This document shows, one piece after another, positions 1 to 13,728 of a stretch of 64,000 nucleotides of DNA. The notes below the pieces were generated by a model that had not been told where the DNA came from, searched no databases, and was given only the letters and a program-made list of their open reading frames with translations. Location: positions 124,001 to 188,000 of IMG/VR virus record IMGVR_UViG_3300030616_000016, one strand, 5' to 3'. A program made the translations under genes and the position numbers. Each line of letters begins with the position of its first letter. Positions within the stretch are counted from its first letter, which is position 1.

Positions 1-962
1 GGAGACCAAAGCCTTGTGCCTTTGGGTCCGCTTTCAATATAAGCACTAGCACCGTCGTATTTTATTCTTACATCACCATCTTTACCAACAATTCTTTTGA
101 ACTTATCAATATCCTGGTCATATGTTAGATGGAGCCTGTCTTTAACAGCCGGCGCGTTTGGTTTCTTAACTCCAAGACTAATAATAGGCACACTTCTATT
201 ATCATTCTTATCCATGATTTTATATAGATAGAGTTTTCTATTATTGATAATATGAGGCGCGCTTATCTCTAGTGAGTTCTCACTACCATGCATATATATT
301 GTCTTAGATGAAACTACCTGTCTGGATTCGCCTGCTCCATAGCCTGTAGGCCCATTCTCTTCTCCTATCCAGGATGTTTCTGCATCCTTAGGAGAATGAT
401 CAAGATTTTGTGCCAGCCAGGCATTACCTTCAAATTCAGACCTGACAAGCTGCATGATTCTATCTTTAGTTGCTTCAGTAATAGAACCATCAGTATTTTT
501 GCTTATCTTAAAATCTTGTGGAAGACGCTTCACAATACTAATGTTACCAATGTGTATATCTACATGGTTACCTGCCTTATTTGCTTCATGTAATATAATG
601 ACCATTTTGGTAAATTGCGCCTTAGCCTTAGTAAATTCATTTGTTCTTCCTGCAGATAGATTGTTAGCAGAAGTAGGACGGCTTGTGTTTACAATTGATG
701 TTAGCATTCTTGCACAAGACTTTGCACATGGTTTTCTTACTGCTTTATTGAACAACATATTACCAATATGCTCAGGAAGCCTGTCTTTCTTGTATGCATC
801 ATACAACTTGTAAGCACTTCTGAATCTTCTGGCTCTACTAATTACTTTTGCAAGTCTTCTGCTCTTGAAAATGAGCGGACCTACAATTAGCTCTTCTGCT
901 ACTTCTCTATATAGAAATTCAGCGTCATGAGTTTTCTTCTCAACTCTCGCTAGAATGTTCAT
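1..962 (-). CDS. ATP-dependent ligase with N-terminal LigD-type 3'-phosphoesterase (PE) domain; partial, C-terminus beyond the left edge
   Basis: Hand translation from ATG 962 is open to position 1 (absent from the ORF track because no stop). PE-like motifs: IILHEANKAGNHVDIHIG (H..HxD, nt 599-546), WLAQNLDHSP and GPTGYGAGES. Ligase motif I KYDG at nt 62-51. Confidence 0.7.
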   Translation of the reverse strand, partial: MNILARVEKKTHDAEFLYREVAEELIVGPLIFKSRRLAKVISRARRFRSAYKLYDAYKKDRLPEHIGNMLFNKAVRKPCAKSCARMLTSIVNTSRPTSANNLSAGRTNEFTKAKAQFTKMVIILHEANKAGNHVDIHIGNISIVKRLPQDFKISKNTDGSITEATKDRIMQLVRSEFEGNAWLAQNLDHSPKDAETSWIGEENGPTGYGAGESRQVVSSKTIYMHGSENSLEISAPHIINNRKLYLYKIMDKNDNRSVPIISLGVKKPNAPAVKDRLHLTYDQDIDKFKRIVGKDGDVRIKYDGASAYIESGPKGTRLWS

Positions 963-974
963 GGTCTTTCTCCG

Positions 975-1307
975 TTAGTGTTGTGAGCCACAGCTTGAAC
1001 ACACGCGTGTATCTACTGAAACATCTCCCCCACAAAATTTGCATATAAAGTTCTTTGTATCTTTTATGTTTTTGACACTGCACGACTCACATACGTTACT
1101 ATATTTCGCTATTGTTTCTATATCTATGTTCTGTGGAACAAGGAATGCGACTATTTGTTCGTATTTCCCAGCAGTGTAGTAATCTTGACAGGTTATGCAA
1201 ACGCATTCCTCGATGAACTGATATACATCATACTTATATGTATCAGGGTCTACCCATTTTTTGATTTTAATTAAGTCTCCTTGTATGAACTTTAGGTATG
1301 TCCTCAT
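975..1307 (-). CDS. Accessory protein with C-terminal zinc ribbon
   Basis: Ends CKFCGGDVSVDTRVCSSCGSQH; GGAG SD upstream. Confidence 0.75.
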   Translation of the reverse strand: MRTYLKFIQGDLIKIKKWVDPDTYKYDVYQFIEECVCITCQDYYTAGKYEQIVAFLVPQNIDIETIAKYSNVCESCSVKNIKDTKNFICKFCGGDVSVDTRVCSSCGSQH

Positions 1308-1316
1308 CTGAATCTC

Positions 1317-1661
1317 CTAAATACTTGTCTCACATCCGCAGTTCTTACAAACACCTTTTTGTATTTCATCGCTGCCACAGAATTCACAAATTGCTAATTT
1401 CGCATATCTAATCGATTCGGATATTAAAAAATATTTTGAACCATTTGATACTATAAAGCAATCGGTAGGAAATAGTGCATCAACAGACTGTATGGTACAA
1501 ATTTTATCTCTTATTAAGTCTTCCACAAGTACATCAAATAGTTCTGTGCTTCTAATTCCTTTTGCATCAGTAAGTGTTGTTTTCATAGGATATGAACGAG
1601 GTATATCGAATACGATTTTTAGCTTATGTTTTATGGCATGCATTGCTTCTTCTATGGTCAT
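1317..1661 (-). CDS. Accessory protein with C-terminal zinc ribbon (start re-assigned to MTIEEAM)
   Basis: Ends CEFCGSDEIQKGVCKNCGCETSI. ATG 1661 has an AAGGA SD and removes the overlap with 1685-1891. Confidence 0.7.
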   Translation of the reverse strand: MTIEEAMHAIKHKLKIVFDIPRSYPMKTTLTDAKGIRSTELFDVLVEDLIRDKICTIQSVDALFPTDCFIVSNGSKYFLISESIRYAKLAICEFCGSDEIQKGVCKNCGCETSI

Positions 1662-1684
1662 AATATTATCCTTTGGAAATGATA

Positions 1685-1891
1685 TTAGGCAGCAAGCTTC
1701 CATACTCCAGCTGAGGCGCCTGCTAATGCCCATGTAGAAGAAATGCCCATATATGTCAATATACTTGCTCCTCCAAGAGTGGAGAGGCATAGCAATGAGA
1801 ATCCTTTCCAGTGATTAGCTATTCCTAAAAAGAAATTTTTTGCTGATGACACGAATGAGTTTGTAGTTCTTGTAATAAAGTCTTTCATCAA
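1685..1891 (-). CDS. Small membrane protein
   Basis: Two hydrophobic Gly/Ala-rich segments; GAGG SD. Confidence 0.55.
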   Translation of the reverse strand: MMKDFITRTTNSFVSSAKNFFLGIANHWKGFSLLCLSTLGGASILTYMGISSTWALAGASAGVWKLAA

Positions 1892-1915
1892 TATACCTCT
1901 GATAAAATGTTAGTT

Positions 1916-2104
1916 TTAGTAATTTGCTATCTGACATAGTGTCACTGCAATAAGAGTTGTTACGACTATGGCGAAGCTTATTGACGCAAGTGAGCCGCAT
2001 CCCATTAGATTTGTAAAGAAATATATGGCCGCGCCGCATCCTCCTCCAATAGCTCCATTCATAAACTTCTGCATTTTTGTTAGTTTTCTTTTGTTATCGT
2101 ACAT
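1916..2104 (-). CDS. Small two-TM membrane protein (start MYDNKRK)
   Basis: AGGAG SD before ATG 2104; two hydrophobic helices. Confidence 0.6.
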   Translation of the reverse strand: MYDNKRKLTKMQKFMNGAIGGGCGAAIYFFTNLMGCGSLASISFAIVVTTLIAVTLCQIANY

Positions 2105-2114
2105 GTTGGTTCTC

Positions 2115-2426
2115 CTAAGTATTAGTTTCACATCCACAATTGCAGCATACTTCATCTTGAATCTCCTTACTGCCACAAAATTGACATTGTATTTCATAAG
2201 GAATTATATATCCTTCATCTACCCAGCGTCTGAGAGTAGTTGCTGTAATTGCGCTCCAGTTACTGCCACACCCTATTTCATTTAGATTACAATCTAGTCC
2301 AATCAGATAAAATGCAGCATCGCAAACGGAATGACGTTCTACTCTGAATATTTGTCCTGAATTGCGCTCAATTTTATCTGTCCATTGCCATAGCTCACCA
2401 ACTTGTGGCATTCTTGTTTCACTCAT
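2115..2426 (-). CDS. Accessory protein with C-terminal zinc ribbon
   Basis: N-terminal PQVGELW (SH3/KOW-like start); ends CQFCGSKEIQDEVCCNCGCETNT. Confidence 0.75.
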   Translation of the reverse strand: MSETRMPQVGELWQWTDKIERNSGQIFRVERHSVCDAAFYLIGLDCNLNEIGCGSNWSAITATTLRRWVDEGYIIPYEIQCQFCGSKEIQDEVCCNCGCETNT

Positions 2427-2598
2427 TTCTCCTCCTTAGATGACAGTGCGCAATATATGCCATATCTGCTATTACTCCTGCAAATAGTGAATTTGAGAAG
2501 TCGGCGCCAAGTGCCTTCATAAGAGAAAACATGATAAGTCCAATAACTGTTGCTATAAGAATTTCCTTACTAGCATTATATGTTTCTTTAGAGCTCAT
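2419..2598 (-). CDS. 59-aa membrane protein (below ORF-track cutoff)
   Basis: MSSKETYNASKEILIATVIGLIMFSLMKALGADFSNSLFAGVIADMAYIAHCHLRRRNE*; AGGAG SD; stop overlaps the next gene. Confidence 0.6.
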   Translation of the reverse strand: MSSKETYNASKEILIATVIGLIMFSLMKALGADFSNSLFAGVIADMAYIAHCHLRRRNE

Positions 2599-2633
2599 TA
2601 TTATATCTCCTATTATTTGCTATGCATTTCTTG

Positions 2634-2904
2634 TCAAAAGTTGCCAAAAACGTGTGCGTGCTTCTTGTTCCCATGCTATACGCCGGTCTTTTACGTCAGG
2701 GCCATCGCATTACACGTCTCAGATTTGTTCTGAGTGCGGCAAAAATGTCAAGAAATCGTTGTCCGCAAGAACCCACATATGCTCCTGCGGATTCGTTGCG
2801 AATCGAGATCACAACGCAGCGTTGAATATTTTGCGACTCGGGATGGAGTCGCTTGCAGCTTCGACTGCATAGATGCTCGGCAATTCATTGCCGAGAGCAT
2901 TCAC
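2634..2904 (+). mobile_element. tnpB: Internally deleted IS200/IS605-family element: 3' end of tnpB plus right-end hairpin
   Basis: YTSQICSECG...KSLSARTHICSCGFVANRDHNAALNILRLG* (2711-2872) matches the TnpB Zn finger/RuvC-III. Perfect hairpin CTCGGCAAT-TC-ATTGCCGAG (2876-2895), end TTCAC (2900-2904), no target duplication. Left boundary approximate. Confidence 0.8.
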
Positions 2905-3316
2905 TTTTGCGTTCTTCTATAGGCATTTCTGAATTGCAGCCGCAATTTAAACATACATCCTTAATCTCATTATGCCCGCAGAATTTGCATATGGCAATAG
3001 ACAGCTCACGTGGCTCGATAATTATATAGATATCTGATGTCCATTCTAAGATAACAAAGTCTATCTTCTCTCCATCATAACCCGTTTCTTTATAGACTCT
3101 TGCTATCTTCAATGGTTCGTGGTCTGCGCACTCAAGTGAGATACATAATAGCACGCCTTCTTCATCTACAATATAGCGTTCTTTATTATGTATTACATTT
3201 TGAGCCTTAAGCGCGGCAGGATTAAATGCATACCATGCATAATTATCATTAGGATCAACTATAACCATAACCTTTAGTCCATTCTTGTAGCACTGCCTTA
3301 CTTCTTTCAGTTTCAT
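2885..3316 (-). CDS. Accessory protein with C-terminal zinc ribbon; last codons supplied by the IS remnant
   Basis: CKFCGHNEIKDVCLNCGC; N-terminus similar to 11886-12305; stop lies inside the IS hairpin. Confidence 0.75.
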   Translation of the reverse strand: MKLKEVRQCYKNGLKVMVIVDPNDNYAWYAFNPAALKAQNVIHNKERYIVDEEGVLLCISLECADHEPLKIARVYKETGYDGEKIDFVILEWTSDIYIIIEPRELSIAICKFCGHNEIKDVCLNCGCNSEMPIEERKSECSRQ

Positions 3317-3346
3317 TATTTTTTCTCCAATATGGATTCACTTGTT

Positions 3347-3643
3347 CTAACTATCAATCGTAAAATCTATTGGATGGTGTATAGTATCGCCTCCTGGTTG
3401 TACTTTTGTGTCTTCTCTACTTTGTTGGTCTGTAAATTCGACATTGACCCATTTAAGAAAACGCATTGGCTCATATGTAAAATCACTAAATGACATTAAC
3501 TCCTGTGCCTCTTGAACTACTGTTACTCGTTCCAGCCATCGTGTTTCTTTAATGTTATTCTTACATATGGTTACTGGCAATAATGCAAACCATGATTTTA
3601 CACGTCTATTGCCTTCTTTCATTTCTTTCTTTTGGAATCTCAC
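3347..3643 (-). CDS. Hypothetical phage protein
   Basis: SWFALLPVTI...RWLERV pattern seen in small phage ORFs; GGAG SD. Confidence 0.55.
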   Translation of the reverse strand: MRFQKKEMKEGNRRVKSWFALLPVTICKNNIKETRWLERVTVVQEAQELMSFSDFTYEPMRFLKWVNVEFTDQQSREDTKVQPGGDTIHHPIDFTIDS

Positions 3644-3645
3644 GC

Positions 3646-3999
3646 TTAATCTCCTCTCATTTCCTCAAGTAGGATATTCAGTGCTTCCCTAGCACGGTCT
3701 GTAAGCCATTGTTGGTCACATGACATACGTAATAATGTGCATTTCATCGGCTTTTCTTCGCTATACATCCATTCAATAAGCTCCTCTGCTTGCTCCCTGT
3801 CTGCAACCTCGACAGTCAGGTAAACAATTTTCTTTCTTGTAAGCATATCTACTATGCCGTTAAAAGTTTTCTCTGCTTGTTCAGGGTTCATCTGTATCAC
3901 CGCCTTTCTTTGCCATAATCGATCTCCTATAGCGTTAATATAACAACTGTAGCGTATCCCCTTACATCTCCTTTCAATATACGATACCGTTAATGTCAA
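3646..3999 (-). CDS. Hypothetical protein
   Basis: Co-oriented, tightly packed ORF. Confidence 0.55.
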   Translation of the reverse strand: MTLTVSYIERRCKGIRYSCYINAIGDRLWQRKAVIQMNPEQAEKTFNGIVDMLTRKKIVYLTVEVADREQAEELIEWMYSEEKPMKCTLLRMSCDQQWLTDRAREALNILLEEMRGD

Positions 4000-4204
4000 A
4001 TTCTTCTATCTTATTTTCTACAGGCCCGATTTTATTACCTAATATGATTCCAGCTGCAAAACATTTTGCACATATAATACCTACATCCAAGTTACCTTGT
4101 GATCCATGTAGCTTGGAATAATTACTTTGATTTATTTCATGATGTGTTATTGTTAATCTTGATTTGCCTTCAGTTCTAACTAAATAAACATATGTTTTAT
4201 TCAT
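3974..4204 (-). CDS. Hypothetical protein
   Basis: Co-oriented ORF with AAGGA SD. Confidence 0.55.
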   Translation of the reverse strand: MNKTYVYLVRTEGKSRLTITHHEINQSNYSKLHGSQGNLDVGIICAKCFAAGIILGNKIGPVENKIEEFDINGIVY

Positions 4205-4229
4205 TGCTTATTCCTTTCATATTTTGGCA

Positions 4230-4607
4230 TTACAAAAGCATTGCGATTTCTTGAATAATAAATAGTTTGGGAGCAACGCATATTTTAACTAAGCATATTG
4301 TATTACAAATTATAAATGGTATAGAAACCAATCCGCAAGTAATTCCTGCTACCCAATAAAACACTTCTTTATTATCGCAAGAATCAAACTCCTTGGTAAT
4401 CAAGCAGTAAAAACAATAAATAGCTGTTGTCAATAATATAATGCCTGCTGTAACTCCAATTATAGACAACCAGAAATTATACCTTAGGAGCTGATTGACT
4501 ATATCTGGAGCCTGAGAAATAGCAAAATCCTTGGTTTTGACTATTGATTCCAGAATTTCCTTGACTAACGACATTGATTCTTTCTCCATATTAAATTTCC
4601 TTTCCAA
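4230..4607 (-). CDS. Two-TM membrane protein
   Basis: Two long hydrophobic segments. Confidence 0.65.
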   Translation of the reverse strand: MERKFNMEKESMSLVKEILESIVKTKDFAISQAPDIVNQLLRYNFWLSIIGVTAGIILLTTAIYCFYCLITKEFDSCDNKEVFYWVAGITCGLVSIPFIICNTICLVKICVAPKLFIIQEIAMLL

Positions 4608-4633
4608 TAAGGGTTAAATTGGCCTAATTCTTT

Positions 4634-4963
4634 TCACGATTGTTCACTTCCGCAGTTTGTGCATGTAGTACCACTAAGATTTGTATAGCCACAATATTTA
4701 CAACTGGCTGTTTCTACAACACTACTGTATGTCCAATAGTATCCTCCTGCAGATATGCATACCAATAAGTATTCGTCTATCTTTGATGCACTTGTTTTTA
4801 TAGTATCAATTATAAATGGAATGTTAAGCGGCGGCTGCATGGTCTCAGATAAGGAGTAATGGTCGTGCTGTGTTCCAAAACTTGGATATTCATTAGGTGT
4901 ATGCCTTCTAATAACACACTTGGTTTTATTCTCCTTGGCTATTTGAAGCTCTTGAATTGTCAT
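4634..4963 (-). CDS. Accessory protein with C-terminal zinc ribbon (HYS..QPP subfamily)
   Basis: HYSLSETMQPPLNIPF and YSSVVETASCKYCG...CTNCGSEQ; close to 12302-12622. Confidence 0.75.
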   Translation of the reverse strand: MTIQELQIAKENKTKCVIRRHTPNEYPSFGTQHDHYSLSETMQPPLNIPFIIDTIKTSASKIDEYLLVCISAGGYYWTYSSVVETASCKYCGYTNLSGTTCTNCGSEQS

Positions 4964-5036
4964 TTGATATTATCCTAACCATGGTAATATTCTTCAAGTT
5001 CTTCTACGAACTCATGCAATTCTTTAAAGACTGTTT

Positions 5037-5300
5037 CTACGCATTTGAGACTATGCCATCCGGCTTCTTTCCACTTTTGCAATTTCCTCTGTTGTAATAT
5101 CCACTGTTGTTTTTCTCATCTACAGCCACTTTAATATCCTCCTTTGACAGATTTTTAACAAGTTTTATTTTATTTGTACACGCCTTATCCGAACATACTA
5201 TACGGTCATTGTCAAATCCACATCCGTACACTGGCAACATGATTTCACCACAAATATCACACTTGATCTGCACCTCAATAGCCCTTATAAATTGGTTCAT
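5037..5300 (-). CDS. Cys-rich hypothetical protein (3' region possibly frameshifted)
   Basis: CDIC...CSDKAC; starts at an ATGA junction. Confidence 0.5.
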   Translation of the reverse strand: MNQFIRAIEVQIKCDICGEIMLPVYGCGFDNDRIVCSDKACTNKIKLVKNLSKEDIKVAVDEKNNSGYYNRGNCKSGKKPDGIVSNA

Positions 5301-5665
5301 TGTTCACCGTCCTTCAATAATTCCGGGTTCTCGTGGATGTTGCCGATAATTTTGCCACTTGTGGCACCATAAAAAATTTGCCCGTCTTCGGTTTCAATAT
5401 AAAAAGTTCCTCCCATCCATTTAACTACACCAATGAGGACGATTTCGAGATCGTATTTTATAATATCACCTTGATAAACATCTTTGTCATCCCTGTCTTT
5501 AATATCGGTGAAGAACTCAGCAATACAGCCCTTTGCCAGCCTCTGAAAATAAGTGTGTCTAAGGTCAGCAACACAAAGCTCGCCGTTTGGGTTGAGGTAA
5601 TATTCATCTTCGTCATGGTCATACTTGCCTTCGTTTTCATTCCATACCCTGAATTTACCAGTCAT
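5297..5665 (-). CDS. yopX: YopX-family protein
   Basis: KFRVWN...TDIKDRDDKDVYQGDII...IIGNIHENPELL. Confidence 0.85.
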   Translation of the reverse strand: MTGKFRVWNENEGKYDHDEDEYYLNPNGELCVADLRHTYFQRLAKGCIAEFFTDIKDRDDKDVYQGDIIKYDLEIVLIGVVKWMGGTFYIETEDGQIFYGATSGKIIGNIHENPELLKDGEQ

Positions 5666-5713
5666 TGTTCTCCGTCCTCCTGTTCTGGTTCTGGTTCCGG
5701 TCCACCGTCTGGA

Positions 5714-6175
5714 CTATTGCTCTGATCCCACCACCTCAAACCACCGACACCGATATTTATTTCCAGCTTGATGAATTTCAGATAATTTAGTTCGTACTTT
5801 AATAATCTCTACCTTATTGACACTGTATTCTTTCGCATGTCGCAAAGTGGGCCATAAATATAAGCCGGGATGACATTCTGTGGTGCATACTGAGAAAAAA
5901 TCAGCCGAGTAAAACCGACCATCTCTATATTTATCAATATGCCCAGCTTCCCGAGTTCGATAACCAATAGCATAACCTTCGTCAATTTCGGGCCAGTCCG
6001 TTGGCGTGTTTAATGTCGCGTTCGGATCTAAAACGGTGTTCGACAAATTGGCTCCGGACAGATTAGCTCCGGACAGGTTGGCTCTGTACAGATTAGCTCC
6101 GGACAAATAGGCTCCGGACAAAGATGTCCCTTCGATCTCTTTTAACAATATTCCATCTTTATTTTTGATTTTCAT
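5714..6175 (-). CDS. Pentapeptide-repeat protein
   Basis: GTSLS GAYLS GANLY RANLS GANLS GANLS, then a Cys/His domain. Confidence 0.75.
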   Translation of the reverse strand: MKIKNKDGILLKEIEGTSLSGAYLSGANLYRANLSGANLSGANLSNTVLDPNATLNTPTDWPEIDEGYAIGYRTREAGHIDKYRDGRFYSADFFSVCTTECHPGLYLWPTLRHAKEYSVNKVEIIKVRTKLSEIHQAGNKYRCRWFEVVGSEQ

Positions 6176-6395
6176 TTTTTATCTCCATCAGCCACTGCCT
6201 TTCCCGATAATAATCGTCCCATCTTTCCTTCCAATACGCATCGTTCTCTTTCCTGCAATCCGGGCAGAGTGTAACCCAATTTTTCTCTTCATCAGTAAAA
6301 AGCGTGTTCTGTCTATATCTTTCAGCGTCATTTGCACCGCACGCTTGACATTTATTCTCTTTTTTAATATCCTTTAACTGAGATTCTGTTTTCAT
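6159..6395 (-). CDS. Small zinc-binding protein
   Basis: CQAC...CPDC. Confidence 0.6.
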   Translation of the reverse strand: MKTESQLKDIKKENKCQACGANDAERYRQNTLFTDEEKNWVTLCPDCRKENDAYWKERWDDYYRERQWLMEIKNENQK

Positions 6396-6895
6396 TGTTC
6401 ACCGTCCTTCCAGACGATGCCGACGATTTTGGCACGCTTAATTTTTTTGTAATCTAAATGGTATAACGAATTGTACCAGCCGCCGCTGTTTGCCCCAAAC
6501 CAGCCATGAGTAGTGCTTATTATATAATTATCAGGACGGCCCGGTTCCACCTGTAGCAGGCCGAGGCATTGGTTGAGATCCATGAGTTTGGATTCTGTTT
6601 TTAAAAGACCGTATATTTTATATAGTCTTTTAGTTCCAAATCTTTCTTTGTGACGTTTTTTCTCCGGCTCAATTAATCTGTACCCCTCTGGCAACTGGTA
6701 AATAGGCTTCTCTGGCTCTAGCTCTTTGAGTTCCAAGCCGATTTCTTCTGGGTCGGTGTATCCCATTGGGCTGTTATAACCACAACAACATACTATATAG
6801 TTTGACATTGTACTTAGTGTAAGTTTATGGCCAAGCGAGGTTGCTGCTTTGTTTATCACATTCTCATACGGACATTTATAATCTTCAATCTTCAT
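6392..6895 (-). CDS. Hypothetical protein
   Basis: ATGA-coupled at both ends; ends KDGEQ*. Confidence 0.6.
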   Translation of the reverse strand: MKIEDYKCPYENVINKAATSLGHKLTLSTMSNYIVCCCGYNSPMGYTDPEEIGLELKELEPEKPIYQLPEGYRLIEPEKKRHKERFGTKRLYKIYGLLKTESKLMDLNQCLGLLQVEPGRPDNYIISTTHGWFGANSGGWYNSLYHLDYKKIKRAKIVGIVWKDGEQ

Positions 6896-7194
6896 TCACC
6901 ATCCTCCTGTGGTTTGATAGTTATTTTGCCATCTAAACAAAAGTGTTTGCAGTTTTTTCTTCTACCTTTTATTGATTTACATAGTATATTTTTATATGCG
7001 TAGCAAACTGCAAAATAAGAAATATTCCACGCTGAAATACCCCATGCTGAAATGTCCCATGCTGAAATATTCTCTGCTGAAATATTTCTTGCTGAAATAT
7101 CCCCTGCTGAAATACTAAAACTAATATCAATGTCACAGCATATGCACACATCATCATCAATAACAGCAGTATTAGTTTTATCAACGTATTTCAA
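6892..7194 (-). CDS. Pentapeptide-like (ISAxx) repeat protein; start either TTG 7194 or ATG 7223 via -1 shift
   Basis: ISAGD ISARN ISAEN ISAWD ISAWG ISAWN (15-bp repeat); ends PQEDGE*. Confidence 0.65.
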   Translation of the reverse strand: MKYVDKTNTAVIDDDVCICCDIDISFSISAGDISARNISAENISAWDISAWGISAWNISYFAVCYAYKNILCKSIKGRRKNCKHFCLDGKITIKPQEDGE

Positions 7195-7241
7195 TAACTC
7201 TTCCTGTTTTTTATTATAATCATTCTCCGTCCTCCTCTGGT

Positions 7242-7568
7242 TCAGTCAATAACGTTTCGTATTTCATTTTCAAATGGATCGACCTCACGTACAATTCCGA
7301 TTTTATATTTGCCGGGCGATAGTGTTACTGGTCCATGCTCCTGATGCATAACGATTGCCTCTTTATCAACATAGCAATAGTGTTCGCCAGTGGCATCTTC
7401 CATTAGCATAACTCCGTCTGCAACACACGAATGATGGTGCCCTGTGACTTTTCCTTCAGCAAAAGTAACAAGTCCTTTTCGTGTGTTTTTTACCGGCTTT
7501 AAATTCGCAGGTATGCTATCAACTTCCTTAAACAGTACATCTCCCTGCTGTATTAAACGTTTCTCCAT
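7242..7568 (-). CDS. QGDV...EGxxTGHxH phage protein, usual partner of DUF6745-like genes
   Basis: IQQGDVLF, FAEGKVTGHHH, HQEHGPVTLSPGKY. Confidence 0.7.
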   Translation of the reverse strand: MEKRLIQQGDVLFKEVDSIPANLKPVKNTRKGLVTFAEGKVTGHHHSCVADGVMLMEDATGEHYCYVDKEAIVMHQEHGPVTLSPGKYKIGIVREVDPFENEIRNVID

Positions 7569-7579
7569 TATTTAAACTC

Positions 7580-8800
7580 CTATGTCAATTGTTCTGGAAT
7601 AAGCTCGCTTTGATTTCTCCAATTTAGAGCTTGTTCCACTGTTTTGATATTTTGTGGTACGCATTCCATGTGCCATGTACCAATGCTTGGATTTAGCATT
7701 TTAAGATAAGGCCATTTGCCGGTCTCACCCTTCAGATCTACTACAACCAATTCATAATCTCCTTGCGTGTCCAGTGATTCAGCGCCCGTAGATTTGACAA
7801 TTCGTTCTATACCTACCTTTCTTATAAACTCCCTACGGACTTCTGCATTATCAAGTTCTGCGAATTTAGCAGGGTCAATGTCATGCTCATTCGTTTCTGC
7901 TAACCACTGCGGAACTCGTACATTATTCAAATGCCACAGTCCCCAACCGTCCGCAAATTTTACAGACATTCCTCCATCTTTATGCAGATGACTGGCTTTC
8001 CAGTTTATTTCGATTGGATTCCGACTTACAATAGCAACATTTTTATACAGTGCGCTTGAGGATATTTTTCTGTTGTAATTTAGAAATATATCATATTTTT
8101 CTTTCTCATATTTAACGCCTATATATTTCCCAAACTCGTAAACTCCGCACCAATCATTCCACCATATGTTTATATACTGCTCGGTTTTTAATTTGTTGGC
8201 ACTAAGCCTGTCACGAAGGCTGTCACGAAGGCTGTCACGAAGGCTGGCATCAAGACTGTTACGAAGACCGGCACTAAGACTATCATAAAAACTATTATGA
8301 AGACTGTCATAAAGACTGTTACGAATATTGTCATGAAGGCTGTTACGAAGACTTTTATGAAGACTGGCATAAAGACTGTCATAAAGACTGGCATAAAGTT
8401 TGTCATAAAGATTGTCATGGAGACTGTTACGAAGACTTTTACGAAGACTTTTACGAAGACTGGCATCAAGACTGTAATAAAGACTGTCATAAAGACTGGT
8501 ATAAAGTTTGTCATAAAGATTGTCATGGAGACTGTTACGAAGACTTTTATGAAGATTGTCATGAAGATTGTTATGAAGATTGTCACTAAGCAAATGTTCT
8601 GTTAGTGCTGTTGTTAATGGGCTATCACAGATTATAATTTTAATGGCATTATCTGCACCAGTCATTTTTACAATAGGCAATACTGCGTGTTTAATTTCTT
8701 CATCACTGTATTGCGCCGATATGAGGTTTAAACAGCGATTTATATGTCTTGGTATCATTTTTTCTTGTTCTTTTGTTAAACTCATAATTTCCTCTTTCAT
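7580..8800 (-). CDS. DUF6745-like protein with central tetrapeptide (LxxS/N) repeat
   Basis: LHKDGGMSVKFADGWGLWHLNNVRVP, EVRREF, YLKMLNPS, over 30 LxxS-type units. Confidence 0.7.
   Translation of the reverse strand: MKEEIMSLTKEQEKMIPRHINRCLNLISAQYSDEEIKHAVLPIVKMTGADNAIKIIICDSPLTTALTEHLLSDNLHNNLHDNLHKSLRNSLHDNLYDKLYTSLYDSLYYSLDASLRKSLRKSLRNSLHDNLYDKLYASLYDSLYASLHKSLRNSLHDNIRNSLYDSLHNSFYDSLSAGLRNSLDASLRDSLRDSLRDRLSANKLKTEQYINIWWNDWCGVYEFGKYIGVKYEKEKYDIFLNYNRKISSSALYKNVAIVSRNPIEINWKASHLHKDGGMSVKFADGWGLWHLNNVRVPQWLAETNEHDIDPAKFAELDNAEVRREFIRKVGIERIVKSTGAESLDTQGDYELVVVDLKGETGKWPYLKMLNPSIGTWHMECVPQNIKTVEQALNWRNQSELIPEQLT
8200..8590. repeat. Intragenic 12-bp tandem repeat with a higher-order 72-nt block duplicated at period 108
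   Basis: Units such as GAAGACTGTCAT/AAAGACTGTTAC; block at 8371 repeated at 8479. Confidence 0.95.
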
Positions 8801-9072
8801 TCTGCGTCCTCCTGTTCTGGTTCTGGTCTTGTTACTTTAAATCCCATGTTTTCAACTTCATCCAAAGTATAAGCATCCTTCCGTGGTTCTTTATATTTTC
8901 TGCTTAATTCTATCCATTTATTACAACTTGGACAACGGCTATACATGTTCCTGATTTCTGTAGGGTCAACCTTATTCAGCATGCACTCTCCATCTTTGCT
9001 TTGAAATGAATCAACAGTGGTTCCACAAAAAGGGCAATACATTTCAAAGTTTACATAGTCATACATTCCCAT
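8797..9072 (-). CDS. Small zinc-binding protein
   Basis: CPFCG...CPSC; ends RPEPEQEDAE*. Confidence 0.6.
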   Translation of the reverse strand: MGMYDYVNFEMYCPFCGTTVDSFQSKDGECMLNKVDPTEIRNMYSRCPSCNKWIELSRKYKEPRKDAYTLDEVENMGFKVTRPEPEQEDAE

Positions 9073-9197
9073 TCTACGTCCTCCTCAATTATTTTTTGAA
9101 GACTTTTGAAATCTGACTTTAAGTCAAAAATTGCTTTTATCATCCATCCTATCGATGTTAGTATAAATGTGATAAAGCAATAGAAAACTATATCCAT
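9051..9197 (-). CDS. 48-aa single-TM protein (below ORF-track cutoff)
   Basis: MDIVFYCFITFILTSIGWMIKAIFDLKSDFKSLQKIIEEDVEWECMTM*; AGGAG SD. Confidence 0.5.
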   Translation of the reverse strand: MDIVFYCFITFILTSIGWMIKAIFDLKSDFKSLQKIIEEDVEWECMTM

Positions 9198-9320
9198 TTG
9201 GTATTCTCCTGTATGTGTATCCGGCCATTTATTAGGCCAAAATGGCCTGATTGATAATTAAGTTTGTTCGATAGGCGCCGCTTAACCGCTTATCAAGGTG
9301 CATTCGTAAGACCCCTGGCT

Positions 9321-9584
9321 TTAGGCGTGGGGTAATGTCACTTCTAAATCTAGTTCATATTTAATTGTTTTTACTAGATCATTAATTAATTCTGGACGTG
9401 TAGCCATAGTTTCTACATTCCAATTTCTGTTGATGTATTGTGGTTTACATCTTAAATTAAAATTTCCTCCAATATCAGAGATAGATTCAATTATAGCTTT
9501 GATTCTTTCAGGAGTTAAACCAGCATTATGATAGTCTTCAAAACTCAAATGGATTATTGTTGTTGTATAATAATTAAGTTTCAT
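9321..9584 (-). CDS. Hypothetical protein
   Basis: Co-oriented ORF coupled to the upstream gene. Confidence 0.55.
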   Translation of the reverse strand: MKLNYYTTTIIHLSFEDYHNAGLTPERIKAIIESISDIGGNFNLRCKPQYINRNWNVETMATRPELINDLVKTIKYELDLEVTLPHA

Positions 9585-9834
9585 TGTTCAATTCCTTTAG
9601 TTTAGCTTTCCATTGTTTTTCTGAATACCATTTGCCATCGAGACACCAAGCCTTATCTCCACTAGCCCACTCAATTGAAGGTCCATCTTCTCTGTGATAT
9701 TTGTCATTAATACACCAATACTTACTTCCATTGAAACCCTCAATTGCTGGAGCACCTTTTCGATGTAAGATTTTGTTTTTATCATAATGATCAAGAATGC
9801 TACCATCTTTATAATAGAATTTACTTCTTCTCAC
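9574..9834 (-). CDS. LHRxDGPA-repeat protein
   Basis: LHRKGAPAIE...YHREDGPSIE...WCLDGK. Confidence 0.7.
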   Translation of the reverse strand: MRRSKFYYKDGSILDHYDKNKILHRKGAPAIEGFNGSKYWCINDKYHREDGPSIEWASGDKAWCLDGKWYSEKQWKAKLKELNNET

Positions 9835-9878
9835 GTTTAGCCCTTTCTCTTATTAAATAATTAATCTATTTTCAATAT

Positions 9879-10352
9879 TTAAGTGGTTTGTAACTCGGCA
9901 ATAAGTAATGTGTTTCGTAAGATACTGCGCACGCTCTCAAAACTAAGATACAAATCGCTGTAGCAATCATTACATGACTCATATGGATAGTTATTGTATA
10001 TATTATCACTCCCACAAAATGGACATGTTAATTTATATAAACTATCAGATACACATTTGTTAATATTGAATGTGAATAATTTTAATGTTAGTGCGTTGCC
10101 TTCATCGAGCGGGACTTTGAACAATAAACTATAGGTACATATATTGTCACTCCCCTTTTTTCCTATACTTTCTAGATAAAGCGGCAATTTTCTTTGTTGG
10201 CCTATGTTAAGTTCTTGAGATACAACAGTCTCCTCCTCATCTGTCATATGGAACCTATAGTTAGTCGTTTGAGTCTCGTTAAGTGTATATGGGTTAGCAA
10301 TATAAATAAGCGGCCATTTCTCTTTCATAGCCTTAAGTAAGTTCAATTCCAT
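9879..10352 (-). CDS. Accessory protein with near-terminal zinc ribbon
   Basis: CPFCGSDNIYNNYPYESCNDC; AGGAG SD. Confidence 0.7.
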   Translation of the reverse strand: MELNLLKAMKEKWPLIYIANPYTLNETQTTNYRFHMTDEEETVVSQELNIGQQRKLPLYLESIGKKGSDNICTYSLLFKVPLDEGNALTLKLFTFNINKCVSDSLYKLTCPFCGSDNIYNNYPYESCNDCYSDLYLSFESVRSILRNTLLIAELQTT

Positions 10353-10401
10353 ATTTGATTGCTCCTTCTTGCCATCAATGTTGTTTTATACATTGATTAT
10401 A

Positions 10402-10472
10402 TTAGTCACGAACCATGTTAATTTCTTTTTTGAATGGATCTACTTCTCTTACAATGTCTATCTTTTCTCCAT
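10402..10472 (-). pseudogene. Collapsed second copy of the QGDV gene (N-terminus joined out of frame to C-terminus)
   Basis: ATG GAG AAA AGA (MEKR, as in 7568) directly followed in another frame by IDIVREVDPFKKEINMVRD*, versus IGIVREVDPFENEIRNVID* of 7242-7568. Confidence 0.75.
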
Positions 10473-10482
10473 TGTTTGACTC

Positions 10483-11598
10483 CTATGTCAATTGTTCTGG
10501 AATAAGCTCGCTCCGATTTCTCCAATTTAGAGCTTGCCGCACTGTTTTGATATTTTGTGGCACGCATTCCATGTGCCATGTGCCAATGCTTGGATTTAGC
10601 ATTTTTAGGTACGGCCATTCGCCAGTTGTGCCTTTTAGATCAACAAGAAGTAGCTCATAATCGCCTTGTTTATCTAATGATTTAGCGCCCATAGATTTGA
10701 CAATTCTTTCAATACCTACCTTATAAATAAATTCTCTGCGAATCTCTGCATTCTTAAGCTTACTGAATTTAGCTGGATCAATATCATGTTCATTTTGCTC
10801 TGCTAACCACCGTGGTACATTTACGTTGTTAAGATGCCAAAGCCCCCAGTTATCTGCGAATCTTACGGACATCCCGCCATCTTTATGCAACTTATTGCCC
10901 TTTGAGTTTATTTCAATTGGATTACGACTTACTAATATGGTATCCCCCCATACATTACAAGAAAATATTTTTCTATTGTAATTCACGACTCGATCATATT
11001 CTTTCTGATCGTATTCTAATCCGAGGTGTTTAAATAGCTCATAACATCCAATCCCTTCAATGTTACTATAACTTATAGATGGTATTAGAGGTTCATCGCC
11101 ACGGACAATCTCTTGATAAAGATGAAATAGATCACCAGTAAAACAGGTATCCTCTTCATAATAAAGCTCAGCAAGAATCTGGAATTTGATGTTACTATGA
11201 ATATCTCTGTTAATACCATCGCTAAGTTTTGAAGACAGCATGTATTTAAGTTTGTTCATCAATGGTTCTTTCTCTTCAGCAGCCTTTTGTACTTCATACA
11301 TATTCTCAGTTATATGGCGGTATTTAATAACTAAAGCTTTTTCTCTTGGCAGCTTTGCTTCTTTGTTGCTGTTATTTTGAATATCAGGCATTTTATTCAC
11401 AATCGCCATTGGACTATCACATATAATGAGTTCAACGTCTTCAATGCTCGTATTTATTACTTCAAGCGCAACAGCCACGGCTTGTTTAATTTCATCATCA
11501 GGATATTGTTTCGTGAGCAAGCTTATGGATTTATTTGCCTGTTGTGATGCAAGTTCTAGCATTTGTTCTTCTGTAAGCTCAGACATTGAGAATTTCAT
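10483..11598 (-). CDS. DUF6745-like paralog with non-repetitive centre
   Basis: Shares IICDSP and the whole C-terminal domain with 7580-8800; last ~120 nt nearly identical. Confidence 0.75.
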   Translation of the reverse strand: MKFSMSELTEEQMLELASQQANKSISLLTKQYPDDEIKQAVAVALEVINTSIEDVELIICDSPMAIVNKMPDIQNNSNKEAKLPREKALVIKYRHITENMYEVQKAAEEKEPLMNKLKYMLSSKLSDGINRDIHSNIKFQILAELYYEEDTCFTGDLFHLYQEIVRGDEPLIPSISYSNIEGIGCYELFKHLGLEYDQKEYDRVVNYNRKIFSCNVWGDTILVSRNPIEINSKGNKLHKDGGMSVRFADNWGLWHLNNVNVPRWLAEQNEHDIDPAKFSKLKNAEIRREFIYKVGIERIVKSMGAKSLDKQGDYELLLVDLKGTTGEWPYLKMLNPSIGTWHMECVPQNIKTVRQALNWRNRSELIPEQLT

Positions 11599-11730
11599 GT
11601 ATTGTTTCCTTTATAAGCGTATTTGTTTTCCTATGTAGGCGGTTGGCCCCAAAGCCACAAACCGCCGCACTTATTCTTTCATATTCCCAGAGAGTGAATT
11701 ACCTTGTAGGAATAACCTTTGTGAGCCATA

Positions 11731-11905
11731 GAAACCTAGATTAGCCTGTAGGAAGCTGGATTGGCTTGTAAAAAGTATGTAATTACTAGATGAGCTTGTG
11801 GAAAGCTAGATTAATCTATAGAAAGTCAGATTAACTTATAAAAAGTCAGATTAACTTATAAAAAGTCAGATTAACTTATAAAAAGTCAGATTAACTTATA
11901 AAAAG
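11731..11905. repeat. 20-bp tandem repeat, perfect on the right and degenerate on the left
   Basis: AAAAGTCAGATTAACTTATA x3 plus one G-variant (11821-11900), preceded by degenerate units from 11731. Confidence 0.9.
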
Positions 11906-12305
11906 TATGGTCACTGGCTCTCTCGTGTTCAGGAATTGCTGTTTCACAACCACAATTATTACAAGTATTTGTCACATCATTGTATCCACAGAACTTACAC
12001 TTGGCATATGTCATATCTTTAAGCCCAGGACATATATATCTATCCTTTATCCACTCGGCAATAGCCAAGATAGTAGTTCCATCGTGTAGTGAGCTTACAG
12101 CAGTTAATGGCTCGTGTAGAACCTTTTGATGTAGCAGGCCCTGGATCTTGTCATCTATGATGATTTTATTTGATCTGTCCTGCGGTTTTTTGTATGTTAA
12201 GATTGCGGGGCCGTATACAAACCATTCAAATGATATTTCGTGCTCCCAGTCTATCATTATTCTTCTTCCACTCTTTATGCATTCATTAATCTCATCAAGA
12301 GTCAT
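11886..12305 (-). CDS. Accessory protein with C-terminal zinc ribbon
   Basis: CKFCGYNDVTNTCNNCGC; paralog of 2885-3316. Confidence 0.75.
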   Translation of the reverse strand: MTLDEINECIKSGRRIMIDWEHEISFEWFVYGPAILTYKKPQDRSNKIIIDDKIQGLLHQKVLHEPLTAVSSLHDGTTILAIAEWIKDRYICPGLKDMTYAKCKFCGYNDVTNTCNNCGCETAIPEHERASDHTFYKLI

Positions 12306-12622
12306 TGCTCACTCCCGCAGTTATTACATGTGTTATTGTTTAAGTCGGTGTAGCCGCAGTATTTACATTCAAATAACTCCACAACACTACTGTATGCATA
12401 ATATATGTTCCAAACGTTTGGTGTGTAGCATTGTATGACCAGCTCATCTAGTTTTGTCTTGCTGGGTGAAGTATGTATTATTGTGAATGGAGTATTGAGC
12501 GGCGGCTGGTCTGCTTTACCTATACTATAGTGTTGTCCAGGCATTGGCGTTAGAGGAGTATGCCTTCTAACAATGCATTTTGTTTTGTTAATCCTGGCAT
12601 TCTCAAGTTGTACATGAGTCAT
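12302..12622 (-). CDS. Accessory protein with C-terminal zinc ribbon (HYS..QPP subfamily)
   Basis: HYSIGKADQPPLNTPF; YSSVVELFECKYCG...CNNCGSEQ. Confidence 0.75.
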   Translation of the reverse strand: MTHVQLENARINKTKCIVRRHTPLTPMPGQHYSIGKADQPPLNTPFTIIHTSPSKTKLDELVIQCYTPNVWNIYYAYSSVVELFECKYCGYTDLNNNTCNNCGSEQ

Positions 12623-12627
12623 TGTTT

Positions 12628-12974
12628 CTATTCTCCTGTATATGAAGGAATCGCGGCGTTATACCATTCACAACCACAATAACTACATGCCCCATCATCA
12701 TTTATGTCACTTCCACAATACTGACAGATGGCCGGCACTACACACGAAACATATACATAATAGCCATCTCTCGTTCTAAGTACTTTTTCCCACATGTATT
12801 TGAGTTGTCTATAAGTTTTATTTGGAATCTTTTCCCTACTGGTGGTTGATGGTTTTCTCTCAAAGAGTAGTGTCCGCCTTCTTTGTGTTCAGTCTTTTTC
12901 TTGGTGTGTTGGGTGGTAATAAACCACGCATCTTTGTTCTTTCGCCAGATCTTACGTAACTGCTTCCATTTCAT
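12628..12974 (-). pseudogene. Zinc-ribbon paralog split by a -1 frameshift at G AAA AAG (programmed shift, phase variation or 1-nt deletion)
   Basis: Frame 0 gives HYSLRENHQPP and stops at 12738. The -1 frame from 12784-12789 gives EKVLRTRDGYYVYVSCVVPAICQYCGSDINDDGACSYCGCEWYNAAIPSYTGE*, ending 6 nt before the next ATG. Confidence 0.75.
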
Positions 12975-13299
12975 TGTTTATCTCCATATCTACTTTGCAT
13001 CCGCAATTGGTACATGTATCACTTCTAATATCCGCGCCACAATACGTACAATAAGCCAATTCTATTACAGACGAGTAAGCATTCTTCATGTCGTTGGTTA
13101 TTACTAGTATATCTGGATTGGATAATGAGGGGAATAGACTGGTTATTCGGAATGGCTCAAATGGTTCTGGTTGGTCGTCAGGATGGACTTCATAGGCTCC
13201 TGCGATTGGATGCTTTTCTCGTTCCTTTGTTTTTCTTGTGATTATGAATCGAGTGCTGTTGTTTTTGCTCCAAATATCACGTAAGTAGTTAAGATCCAT
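12952..13299 (-). CDS. Accessory protein with C-terminal zinc ribbon (start re-assigned to MDLNYL)
   Basis: YSSVIELAYCTYCGADIRSDTCTNCGC; GGAGA SD before ATG 13299. Confidence 0.75.
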   Translation of the reverse strand: MDLNYLRDIWSKNNSTRFIITRKTKEREKHPIAGAYEVHPDDQPEPFEPFRITSLFPSLSNPDILVITNDMKNAYSSVIELAYCTYCGADIRSDTCTNCGCKVDMEINNEMEAVT

Positions 13300-13378: not shown

Positions 13379-13468
13379 ACCCTAAATCAAACCACATTGG
13401 AGGAGTGTCTTCACGCCGCTCATTAATTCAATTGGCACACTCTTTGCAATTAGAGTATACTAGATAGT

Positions 13469-13604
13469 AATCTACAAGATAAGCAATCTACAAGATAACC
13501 TATCTACAAGGTAACATAGTAGTCTTCTAGTAACACACCTATATTTATATATAGGTGTGTAATCTACAAGTAACTAGTCTATCTACAAGGTTGCAACCTT
13601 GTAG
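13469..13604. repeat. ATCTACAAG direct-repeat cluster with two palindromes
   Basis: Copies at 13470, 13486, 13502, 13562, 13581; 12-bp stem 13533-13560; perfect 22-bp palindrome 13583-13604. Confidence 0.9.
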
Positions 13605-13634
13605 GTAACGTCACCTCAAATTCTTTCTCTCCTG

Positions 13635-13728
13635 GGAGCCCATCACGCTACGCGTAAATTTGGAGCCCATCACTCGGCGCGTAAATGTACGCGCCAAGGT
13701 AGAAAGACCCCGGCGCGAAGCGCCGGGG
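13635..13728. repeat. 27-bp tandem duplication and two GC-rich hairpins
   Basis: GGAGCCCATCAC at 13635/13662; CGCGTAAAT at 13651/13678; GGCGCGTA-AATG-TACGCGCC; CCCCGGCGC-GAA-GCGCCGGGG. Confidence 0.75.

What the first reader, a model, noticed from the sequence alone, without database searches (positions are those of the whole stretch)
975..13299. Expanded family of about 10 small proteins: variable N-terminal domain plus a common C-terminal zinc-ribbon tag
Seen: CxF/YCG-x(6-9)-CxxCG at the very end of 975, 1317, 2115, 2885, 4634, 11886, 12302, 12628 (frameshifted) and 12952, and a longer-spaced sub-terminal variant in 9879. N-terminal parts fall into at least three groups (HYS..QPP: 4634/12302/12628/12952; L.E...C.K.G..VM: 2885/11886; G-D/E-L: 975/2115). 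They form two clusters either side of the 5.0-9.2 kb block and are interleaved with tiny two-TM genes. Inference: a modular effector library in which the ribbon is a shared docking/addressing module (to an RNAP, host complex or each other) and the N-termini are diversified specificity domains, e.g. anti-defence. I do not recognise a named family with this organisation.
Basis: partly seen in the sequence, partly recalled or inferred. Interest (0 to 1): 0.7.

Follow-up and report, generated by a model that had tools for sequence, protein, structure and literature searches.

The report
Expanded zinc-ribbon small-protein family, jumbo phage

Summary
All ten listed genes end in C-x-[FY]-C-G-x(6-12)-C-x-x-C. 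Four more members lie outside the window, and 12 of the 14 sit within 20.4 kb of a 231.6-kb marine-sediment jumbo phage. Shuffled sequence gives no such motif.

The "variable N-domain plus shared tag" reading is only partly right.
- The first 18 residues (helix plus strand) are also shared by groups A, B, C and one singleton. They outscore all 292 other gene starts in the genome.
- AlphaFold gives both A and B the same layout: helix, small SH3-like barrel with a long variable loop, then the ribbon.
- No copy lacks a ribbon.
- Most members therefore look like one diverged paralog family built on a fixed frame. Three members share only the ribbon.

The ribbon itself is generic; its best matches are bL32, eL37 and RadA. 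No Pfam, PHROG or NCBIfam family fits. Relatives exist only in close strains and in one phage whose flanking gene is 68% identical.

Turnover is fast:
- one strain-specific frameshift;
- one extra paralog in a sister strain;
- dN/dS of 0.4-1.8 against 0-0.13 in flanking genes.

Most members are acidic. The best reading is a lineage-specific set of zinc-stapled binder proteins for host takeover or counter-defence. Function is inferred, not shown.

The parts
975..1307 (-). Family member, 110 aa. It shares only the ribbon (CKFCGGDVSVDTRVCSSCG) and lacks the shared N-terminal element. It has five further Cys upstream of the ribbon.
1317..1661 (-). Family member, group C, 114 aa from MTIEEA. It has the shared N-terminal helix-strand element plus the ribbon CEFCGSDEIQKGVCKNCG.
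2115..2426 (-). Family member, 103 aa. Its ribbon is 73% identical to that of 1317 over 22 aa. It has no shared N-terminal element.
2885..3316 (-). Family member, group B, 143 aa. AF2 gives a helix, a strand, a roughly 50-aa low-confidence loop, four strands, the ribbon and an extra C-terminal helix.
4634..4963 (-). Family member, group A, 109 aa. It is 50% identical to 12302.
9879..10352 (-). Outlying member, 157 aa. Its ribbon is longer and sub-terminal (CPFCG-x12-CNDCYS) and is followed by a 27-aa tail. It shares this ribbon variant with genome 47370-47858.
11886..12305 (-). Family member, group B, 139 aa. Its start overlaps the stop of the upstream member by 4 nt. It is 94% identical to its counterpart in strain L011.
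12302..12622 (-). Family member, group A, 106 aa. The AF2 model has pLDDT 86. It holds the only two SNPs in 11.2 kb against strain L017. dN/dS against L011 is 1.8, with the changes clustered in the N-terminal helix and one hairpin.
12628..12974 (-). Frameshifted group A member, read as two ORFs (12738-12974 and 12628-12795). The intact 115-aa allele is in strain L011 and in run X2, which has one extra G after 12791.
12952..13299 (-). Family member, group A, 115 aa from MDLNYL. It is 63% identical to its L011 counterpart, with dN/dS 0.54.

Best explanation
This is a lineage-specific, tandemly expanded family of small (103-157 aa), soluble, mostly acidic proteins. It lies in the non-structural, leftward-transcribed accessory arm of an uncultivated marine-sediment jumbo phage distantly related to Bacillus phage 0305phi8-36.

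Each protein is one compact unit. An N-terminal helix and first strand, together with a C-terminal four-cysteine zinc ribbon, form a fixed frame. Between them lies a small SH3-like beta-barrel whose long first loop and hairpins differ from copy to copy. The ribbon most likely acts as a zinc staple that keeps a very small domain folded, not as a common address tag.

The variable surface of each copy is inferred to bind a different host or phage macromolecule, probably a protein. The set would then work as an arsenal for host takeover or counter-defence that is gained, lost and altered quickly.

Shown: the family, its clustering, its three-part conservation pattern, its restriction to a narrow lineage and its rapid turnover. 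Inferred: the fold of groups other than A, zinc binding, the timing of expression and the binding function.
For: Family and clustering:
- 14 members, 12 of them within 20.4 kb; the motif never arises in shuffles.

Three-part conservation:
- The ribbon is invariant in C, C, G, C, C.
- Leave-group-out, position-anchored test of the first 18 residues: 8 of the 10 members tested in groups A, B, C and g116888 outrank all 292 other gene starts of the genome.
- In-register hhalign top hits cover residues 1-18 or 1-25 between groups.
- The middle parts are not recognised across groups by leave-group-out HMMs.

Fold:
- AF2 of a group A member: pLDDT 86, pTM 0.74, with helix 3-11, strand 16-18, loop 19-45, four strands, then the ribbon.
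- Group B has the same order of elements, with the loop expanded to about 50 residues.
- Both models hit the same generic SH3-like barrels (PetP, KOW, Mib repeat, PsaE, NdhS, YfhH, WYL); 23 of 50 PDB entries are common to both lists.
- No ribbon-less paralog exists.
- The ribbon resembles generic ribbons of bL32, eL37, RadA and NrdD only.

Protein properties:
- pI is 4.4-5.8 in 11 of the 13 members of this genome that were tested.

Turnover:
- A sister strain has an intact copy of the pseudogene plus an extra paralog.
- The frameshift is strain-specific.
- dN/dS is 0.40, 0.54 and 1.83 for three members, against 0.13 and 0 for two flanking genes.
- The only 2 SNPs in 11.2 kb against strain L017 fall in one member.
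- A relative at 68% identity in the flanking gene has one member next to an orthologous 2-TM gene, and has a cREC_REC gene where the window has two members.
- Relatives at 44-46% identity have none within 10 kb.
- An exhaustive HMMER search of 1.84 billion representatives finds full-length relatives only in these genomes.

Precedent: small zinc-ribbon phage proteins that block defences exist, namely Lar and the 52-aa Enki (10.1101/2024.06.14.598830).
Against: - No functional evidence of any kind was obtained. No RNA run was listed. No target is known, and no similarity to a known anti-defence protein reached a threshold.
- The group B model is of middling confidence (pLDDT 68). It was made with an alignment that included groups A and C, which may pull it towards their fold. 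The ESM Atlas single-sequence model of the same protein is poor (pLDDT 0.40).
- Three members (975, 2115 and genome 36055) share only the ribbon and could have a separate origin.
- The dN/dS of 1.8 rests on about 24 changes clustered in two patches. A recombination patch could explain it as well as selection.
- Sigma-70-like promoters are not enriched in the region, so nothing places these genes in the early class.
Confidence: 0.5

Rival explanations
1. One reading: the ribbon is a shared docking or addressing module that takes every member to one common partner (a phage or host RNA polymerase, a host complex, or each other). The rest of each protein supplies the specificity.
For: The ribbon is the best-conserved part, including non-ligand positions ([FY] after the first Cys, G after the second, N before the fourth, G-[CS]-E after it). 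Three members share nothing else detectable. The genome encodes at least one RNA polymerase beta-like protein, at genome 104709-105134.
Against: The conserved non-ligand residues are those of ordinary zinc knuckles. The same profile picks up bL32, eL37, RadA, NrdD and hundreds of unrelated multi-ribbon proteins. The N-terminal 18 residues are conserved as well, and no N-part occurs without a ribbon or with another tail. That pattern is what descent by duplication predicts, and domain shuffling does not predict it. No partner was tested.
Confidence: 0.15
2. The members are nucleic-acid-binding regulators: specific transcription factors, RNA binders or structural DNA-binding proteins. This was proposed for the roughly 35-copy zinc-ribbon expansion of Bacillus phage G.
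For: Zinc ribbons and SH3-like, Sm, KOW and WYL barrels often bind nucleic acids. Hfq, NusG-KOW and WYL regulators are among the structural neighbours. Iyer et al. 2021 made this proposal for phage G (PMC7824862). Short repeat arrays flank cluster II. Of the 13 members of this genome that were tested, one is strongly basic (genome 116888, pI 9.5) and one is near neutral (12302, pI 7.6); the intact allele of the pseudogene in strain L011 has pI 8.1.
Against: 11 of the 13 tested members of this genome are acidic, with net charge -1.5 to -17. This is unusual for DNA or RNA binders. The structural matches are generic. The phage G family has a different architecture and is not detectably related.
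Confidence: 0.15
3. The array is largely dispensable: duplicated small ORFs drifting in a recombination-prone, mobile-element-ridden region, with no specific role for most copies.
For: There is one frameshifted copy and presence/absence differences between close strains. A TnpB remnant lies inside the cluster and an HNH endonuclease gene lies about 2 kb away. dN/dS is raised.
Against: Thirteen copies keep open frames, all four cysteines, tight or overlapping gene junctions and, in most, the N-terminal element, despite 20-50% identity between copies. Two of three strain pairs have dN/dS well below 1. Drift alone would have destroyed the ribbons.
Confidence: 0.1

Closest known systems
Lineage-specific zinc-ribbon expansion of Bacillus phage G (about 35 copies, e.g. 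gp32 YP_009015343.1 and the tandem set gp469-474), described by Iyer et al. 2021 (PMC7824862)
   Same: A jumbo phage carries tens of small paralogous zinc-ribbon proteins, partly in tandem arrays, with variable parts next to a conserved ribbon. Function is unknown.
   Different: In phage G the ribbon (CPICN...C.N.CY) is internal or N-terminal and is followed by a conserved helical tail (WKENDKYL). Here the ribbon is C-terminal and follows an SH3-like barrel. The family profile gives only one 18.8-bit match in the whole phage G genome, so the two are analogous, not homologous.
Generic zinc-ribbon domains (Pfam Zn_Ribbon_1 PF13240, DZR PF12773; ribbons of bL32, eL37, RadA, NrdD)
   Same: Two CxxC knuckles 6-12 residues apart, with a CxxCG consensus. 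These are the best sequence matches of the ribbon part.
   Different: Scores stay below every curated cut-off (9-21 bits against 25-29). These families say nothing about the barrel or the N-terminal element.
Small SH3-like beta-barrels preceded by a helix (Sm/Hfq, KOW, Tudor, WYL, PetP, PsaE, NdhS)
Small zinc-ribbon anti-defence proteins of phages: Lar (PF14354 / TIGR03655) and Enki (52 aa, blocks AbiH and a retron; bioRxiv 10.1101/2024.06.14.598830)
   Same: Small phage-encoded proteins built around a zinc ribbon that act by binding host defence components. They show that such a function is plausible for this kind of protein.
   Different: They are much shorter and have no barrel. Only member 9879 touches the Lar models, below cut-off (E 0.012 and 0.005).

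Membership tests
Pfam zinc-ribbon families (Zn_Ribbon_1 PF13240, DZR PF12773, Zn_ribbon_15 PF17032) | Four Cys in two knuckles, CxxC-x(n)-CxxC | tested here: met
   These columns are invariant in 14 and in 17 aligned sequences.
Pfam zinc-ribbon families (Zn_Ribbon_1 PF13240, DZR PF12773, Zn_ribbon_15 PF17032) | HMM score at or above the gathering threshold | tested here: not met
   The best scores are 20.8 bits against 27.3 (DZR), 17.3 against 28.9 (Zn_ribbon_15) and 12.8 against 25 (Zn_Ribbon_1).
Pfam zinc-ribbon families (Zn_Ribbon_1 PF13240, DZR PF12773, Zn_ribbon_15 PF17032) | Zinc actually bound | not testable with these tools
   This needs metal analysis of purified protein.
Lar restriction-alleviation family (PF14354, TIGR03655) | HMM score above the curated cut-off | tested here: not met
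   Only 9879 matches: 16.3 bits against 28.6 and E 0.005 in NCBIfam. The match covers the ribbon alone.
DUF2829 / Tad2 (considered because of the MTFxEAxxAxxxGxxV-like start, recalled from memory) | Match to the Pfam DUF2829 model, or a structural match to solved Tad2 | tested here: not met
   No DUF2829 hit at E up to 1 for any of ten members. No Tad2 entry is among the Foldseek or VIA-align hits.
Phage G zinc-ribbon expansion (Iyer et al. 2021) | Internal CPICN...C.N.CY ribbon followed by a conserved helical WKENDKYL tail | tested here: not met
   The gp32 translation and the gp469-474 alignment show that architecture. Here the ribbon is terminal and no such tail exists. The family profile gives 18.8 bits at best in phage G.
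SH3-like small beta-barrel fold (Sm, KOW, Tudor, WYL) | Five-stranded bent barrel, with or without an N-terminal helix, by structure comparison | tested here: inconclusive
PHROGs phage protein families | HMM match to any PHROG | tested here: not met
   No family at E below 0.004. The weak hits cover the ribbon only.

The most novel reading that the evidence does not exclude
The family is a phage-encoded binder repertoire built on one frame. The conserved N-terminal helix-strand and the C-terminal zinc ribbon clamp a minimal SH3-like barrel, and its loops are diversified copy by copy to neutralise different host defence or housekeeping proteins. The conserved 5' and 3' gene ends would also serve as recombination handles that let strains swap, gain and lose cassettes. 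This would be a natural analogue of engineered small-scaffold binders, and a new class of counter-defence proteins.
Probability: 0.15. Interest if true: 0.7.

Novelty: new variant of a known kind. Interest (0 to 1): 0.4.

Why it matters
Jumbo phages hold hundreds of small genes of unknown function, and lineage-specific expansions among them are thought to mark conflict with the host. It has a clear three-part design, one confident structural model for group A, and strain-level evidence of rapid gain, loss and change. Fourteen natural variants on one frame in one genome make a ready-made panel for binding and counter-defence screens. If they prove to be binders, they would add a compact zinc-stapled scaffold to the known anti-defence repertoire. 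If they do not, the family remains an ordinary example of paralog expansion in an accessory region.

Tried and rejected
Searches for relatives that found little or nothing:
- Megablast of the first 14 kb and tblastn of member 4634 against GenBank phages gave no match.
- The search for related loci with the family alignment had no usable conserved stretch. With the group A alignment on IMG/VR, 24 pattern hits were found and none was confirmed.
- The metagenome scan with the flanking 546-aa protein returned only the window's own contig.
- The word-indexed protein search found only the genome's own proteins and one close-strain protein.
- The only IMG/VR relative by capsid protein (38% identity, 69-kb fragment) has no member.

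Other negative results:
- The DUF2829/Tad2 idea, prompted by the N-terminal sequence pattern, was rejected: no HMM or structural support.
- ESM Atlas feature searches scored 0.79-0.81, which is noise level. The T4 Y07B lead was not pursued.
- Sigma-70 promoter-like sites are not enriched (52 against 48.9 expected).
- The CTTGTAGAT-type repeat is local and is not a genome-wide promoter motif.
- Rfam has no match in the window.
- No RNA sequencing run was listed.
- The transmembrane minigenes are not a paralog family.

The complex-prediction job was not used, because I claim no specific partner.


Full report
**Where the window lies.** The window is bases 124001-188000 of a 231,647-bp virus record, CheckV 95% complete. 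The same contig appears as Ga0272442_10000021. Near-identical sequence is found in marine-sediment metagenome runs. Terminase, portal, protease, major head and tail-sheath genes lie on the plus strand from about 31 kb. The head protein is 31% identical to that of Bacillus phage 0305phi8-36, the nearest cultured relative. The first 24 kb of the window, and most of the genome upstream of it, are transcribed leftward and are full of small genes. A gene matching RNA_pol_Rpb2_6 lies at genome 104709-105134.

**The observation.**
- A genome-wide scan finds four more members: genome 116888-117229, 117978-118319 and 119077-119472, just upstream of the window, and 36055-36480.
- The motif occurs 13 times in the genome and never in 30 triplet-shuffled genomes or 200 residue-shuffles of the called proteins.
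- Twelve of the fourteen members lie within 20.4 kb (binomial 1.7e-11).
- About 30 of roughly 309 called genes have some CxxC...CxxC pair, so zinc-binding minigenes are common in this phage. The tight C.[FY]CG...C..CG type is confined to this family.

**How the members relate.**
- BLAST confirms group A (4634, 12302, 12952 and the frameshifted copy) and group B (2885, 11886). It adds group C: 1317 with the two members at genome 117978 and 119077.
- The proposed third group, 975 with 2115, has no support (hhalign E 0.15).
- With the ribbon cut off, profile-profile comparison gives only weak matches between groups: A-C E 0.011 over 68 columns, B-C 0.003 over 25, and A-B 0.03 over 18. These matches start in register at residue 1.
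- Leave-group-out HMMs of the ribbon-less parts do not pick out the omitted group above the background of other ORFs. The middle parts are therefore not detectably alike.
- The first 18 residues are alike. In a position-anchored, leave-group-out BLOSUM test against the starts of all 292 other called genes, both B members, all three C members, g116888 and two of four A members outscore every background gene. The other two A members rank 3 and 15 of 292.
- Members 975, 2115 and genome 36055 lack this element, and 9879 is borderline.
- Neither BLAST nor an HMM of the N-parts finds any copy without a ribbon in the genome.
- The conservation pattern therefore has three parts: a shared start, a variable middle and a shared ribbon. 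That fits a diverged paralog family better than a tag grafted onto unrelated domains. For three members, only the ribbon links them to the rest.

**Structure.**
- AlphaFold2 of 12302 with the 17-sequence family alignment gives pLDDT 86 and pTM 0.74. The elements are helix 3-11, strand 16-18, a long loop 19-45, strands 46-53, 61-67, 70-77 and 81-83, then the ribbon.
- Member 2885 gives pLDDT 68 with the same order of elements. Its loop is about 50 residues of low confidence, and there is an extra C-terminal helix.
- Foldseek finds nothing at E below 0.001 in PDB, BFVD or AlphaFold DB clusters.
- ESM Atlas structure neighbours include WYL clusters at TM about 0.5.
- These values are typical for a common small fold and carry no functional meaning.
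- Caveat: the B model used an alignment that contains A and C sequences, and the Atlas single-sequence model of 2885 is poor (pLDDT 0.40). The shared fold is well supported for A and only moderately for the rest.

**The ribbon is generic.**
- No member reaches a curated cut-off in Pfam, PHROGs or NCBIfam.
- Against PDB sequences, the family profile matches only through positions 84-106, to ribbons of bL32 (E 1e-4), eL37, RadA and similar proteins.
- In the exhaustive HMMER search of 1.84 billion representatives, 149 proteins pass E 0.001. Most of these match through the ribbon positions alone, many of them in several stretches. The short full-length matches that I read were unrelated upstream of the ribbon.
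- The conserved non-ligand residues of the ribbon are ordinary zinc-knuckle residues. They do not call for a shared partner.

**Distribution and turnover.** Full-length relatives exist only in the genome itself, in close strains and in one further phage.
- Strain contig L011 (ENA) carries the cluster II array. It has an intact 115-aa version of the gene that is frameshifted in the window, plus an extra 111-aa paralog absent from the window.
- Strain contig L017, an independent assembly, has the same frameshift as the window. So does run X1. Run X2 carries the intact allele, with one extra G after 12791.
- Between the window and L011, three members show dN/dS of 0.40, 0.54 and 1.83, against 0.13 and 0 for two flanking genes. 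Amino-acid identity is 94, 63 and 84% against 85 and 100%.
- The changes in 12302 cluster in the N-terminal helix and one hairpin, so a recombination patch is as likely as point selection.
- Between the window and L017, 11.2 kb differ by two SNPs, both inside 12302-12622. They also differ by the loss of two units of a 20-nt tandem repeat.
- Contig L013 has a flanking 542-aa protein 68% identical to the window's. It holds one group A-like member (P0034, about 30% identical), followed by an ortholog of the window's two-TM gene 1685-1891. A cREC_REC gene sits where the window has members 1317 and 975.
- Two relatives at 44-46% identity in that flanking protein have no member within 10 kb on either side.
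- The family is thus young, narrow in range and unstable in copy number.

**Surroundings.**
- Genes are tightly packed or overlapping; for example, 12302 and 11886 share four bases.
- Small transmembrane genes are interspersed but unrelated to each other.
- The 5.0-9.2 kb block between the two window clusters holds YopX, pentapeptide-repeat and DUF6745 genes and several other zinc-binding minigenes.
- A TnpB C-terminal remnant lies on the opposite strand inside cluster I. An HNH endonuclease gene lies about 2 kb beyond cluster II.
- Cluster II is bracketed by short repeat arrays and preceded by a strong GC hairpin.
- Promoter-like sites are not enriched. No RNA data were listed.

**Mechanism.** Of the 13 members of this genome that were tested, 11 have pI 4.4-5.8. 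This argues against general nucleic-acid binding and fits protein binding. I commit, at about 0.5, to a set of zinc-stapled small-barrel binders for host takeover or counter-defence. The helix-strand and ribbon form the frame, and the loop and hairpins form the specificity surface. The family, its design and its turnover are shown. Zinc binding, the fold outside group A, the timing of expression and any target are inferred. The rivals are the shared docking-tag reading (0.15), nucleic-acid-binding regulators as proposed for phage G (0.15) and largely dispensable drifting duplicates (0.1).

**Comparison with what is known.** The nearest described case is the roughly 35-copy zinc-ribbon expansion of Bacillus phage G (PMC7824862). 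I checked it directly. gp32 and the tandem set gp469-474 have an internal ribbon followed by a conserved helical tail, and they are not detectably related to this family. Small zinc-ribbon anti-defence proteins (Lar, Enki) show that the inferred role is plausible. Interest is moderate.

Noticed in passing
window 2531-2872 (+), TnpB-like part about 2663-2872: An ORF on the opposite strand, in the gap between members 2885 and the 2419-2598 TM gene, matches the Cas12f1-like/TnpB TNB domain (PF07282, E 8e-13). Only the C-terminal 60-70 residues remain, so it is a remnant of an IS605/IS607-type element inside the cluster. Rfam finds no RNA there.
   Followed up: partly
window 11718-11906: A 20-nt tandem repeat (AGATTAACTTATAAAAAGTC, 4.9 clean copies plus degenerate ones) sits directly downstream of member 11886 and overlaps its stop. 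Strain L017 has two units fewer, and run X2 shows indels and no coverage there.
   Followed up: partly
window 13458-13728: Upstream of cluster II there are five copies of ATCTACAAG within a 16-nt repeat array (13458-13515, plus 13562 and 13581), a 27-nt direct repeat (13635-13686) and a perfect 9-bp GC hairpin (13708-13728) just after the 58-aa gene. The nonamer is local and is not a genome-wide motif.
   Followed up: partly
window 7580-8800 and 10483-11598 (-): Two paralogous DUF6745 proteins (300 nt at their 3' ends are 82% identical). The first holds a 12-nt repeat array of about 32 units (8200-8590) that encodes a degenerate four-residue repeat (roughly L-x-x-S/N).
   Followed up: no
window 5297-5665, 5714-6175, 6892-7194 (-): A YopX-family protein, a pentapeptide-repeat protein and a second protein with 15-nt (five-residue) repeats lie in the block between the two clusters. 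Several genes there end in ...DGE(Q), with the next gene's ribosome-binding site inside the shared 17-nt 3' end.
   Followed up: no
window 3-962 (-) continuing to genome 123322 (L014:3322-4962): A 546-aa protein with a KYDGAS motif that recalls the ligase adenylation motif (my reading only; no Pfam hit). It has 64 homologs on long metagenomic contigs (up to 255 kb), which makes it a useful marker for this clade of jumbo phages.
   Followed up: partly
L009:6345-6668 (-) = genome 118345-118668: A 107-aa protein starts MKILKCNKGFAFIELVVLLAII. This resembles a type IV pilin / pseudopilin prepilin leader and hydrophobic N-terminus. It lies directly upstream of member 117978.
   Followed up: no
window 15261-15650 (+): A free-standing HNH endonuclease gene lies on the opposite strand (Pfam HNH and HNH_5 on the identical gene of strain contig L017).
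   Followed up: no
genome 104709-105134 (-), outside the window: A 561-aa open frame matches RNA_pol_Rpb2_6 (51.6 bits, above cut-off). The Rpb1_2 model found nothing. The relative L020 also has an Rpb2_6 gene about 10 kb from the shared marker gene.
   Followed up: partly
window 8797-9072, 5037-5300, 6159-6395 (-): Further small proteins with other arrangements of CxxC pairs (for example, an N-terminal CPFCG ... CPSCN in 8797-9072). They are not part of the family. About 30 of roughly 309 called genes in the genome have a four-Cys pair.
   Followed up: no
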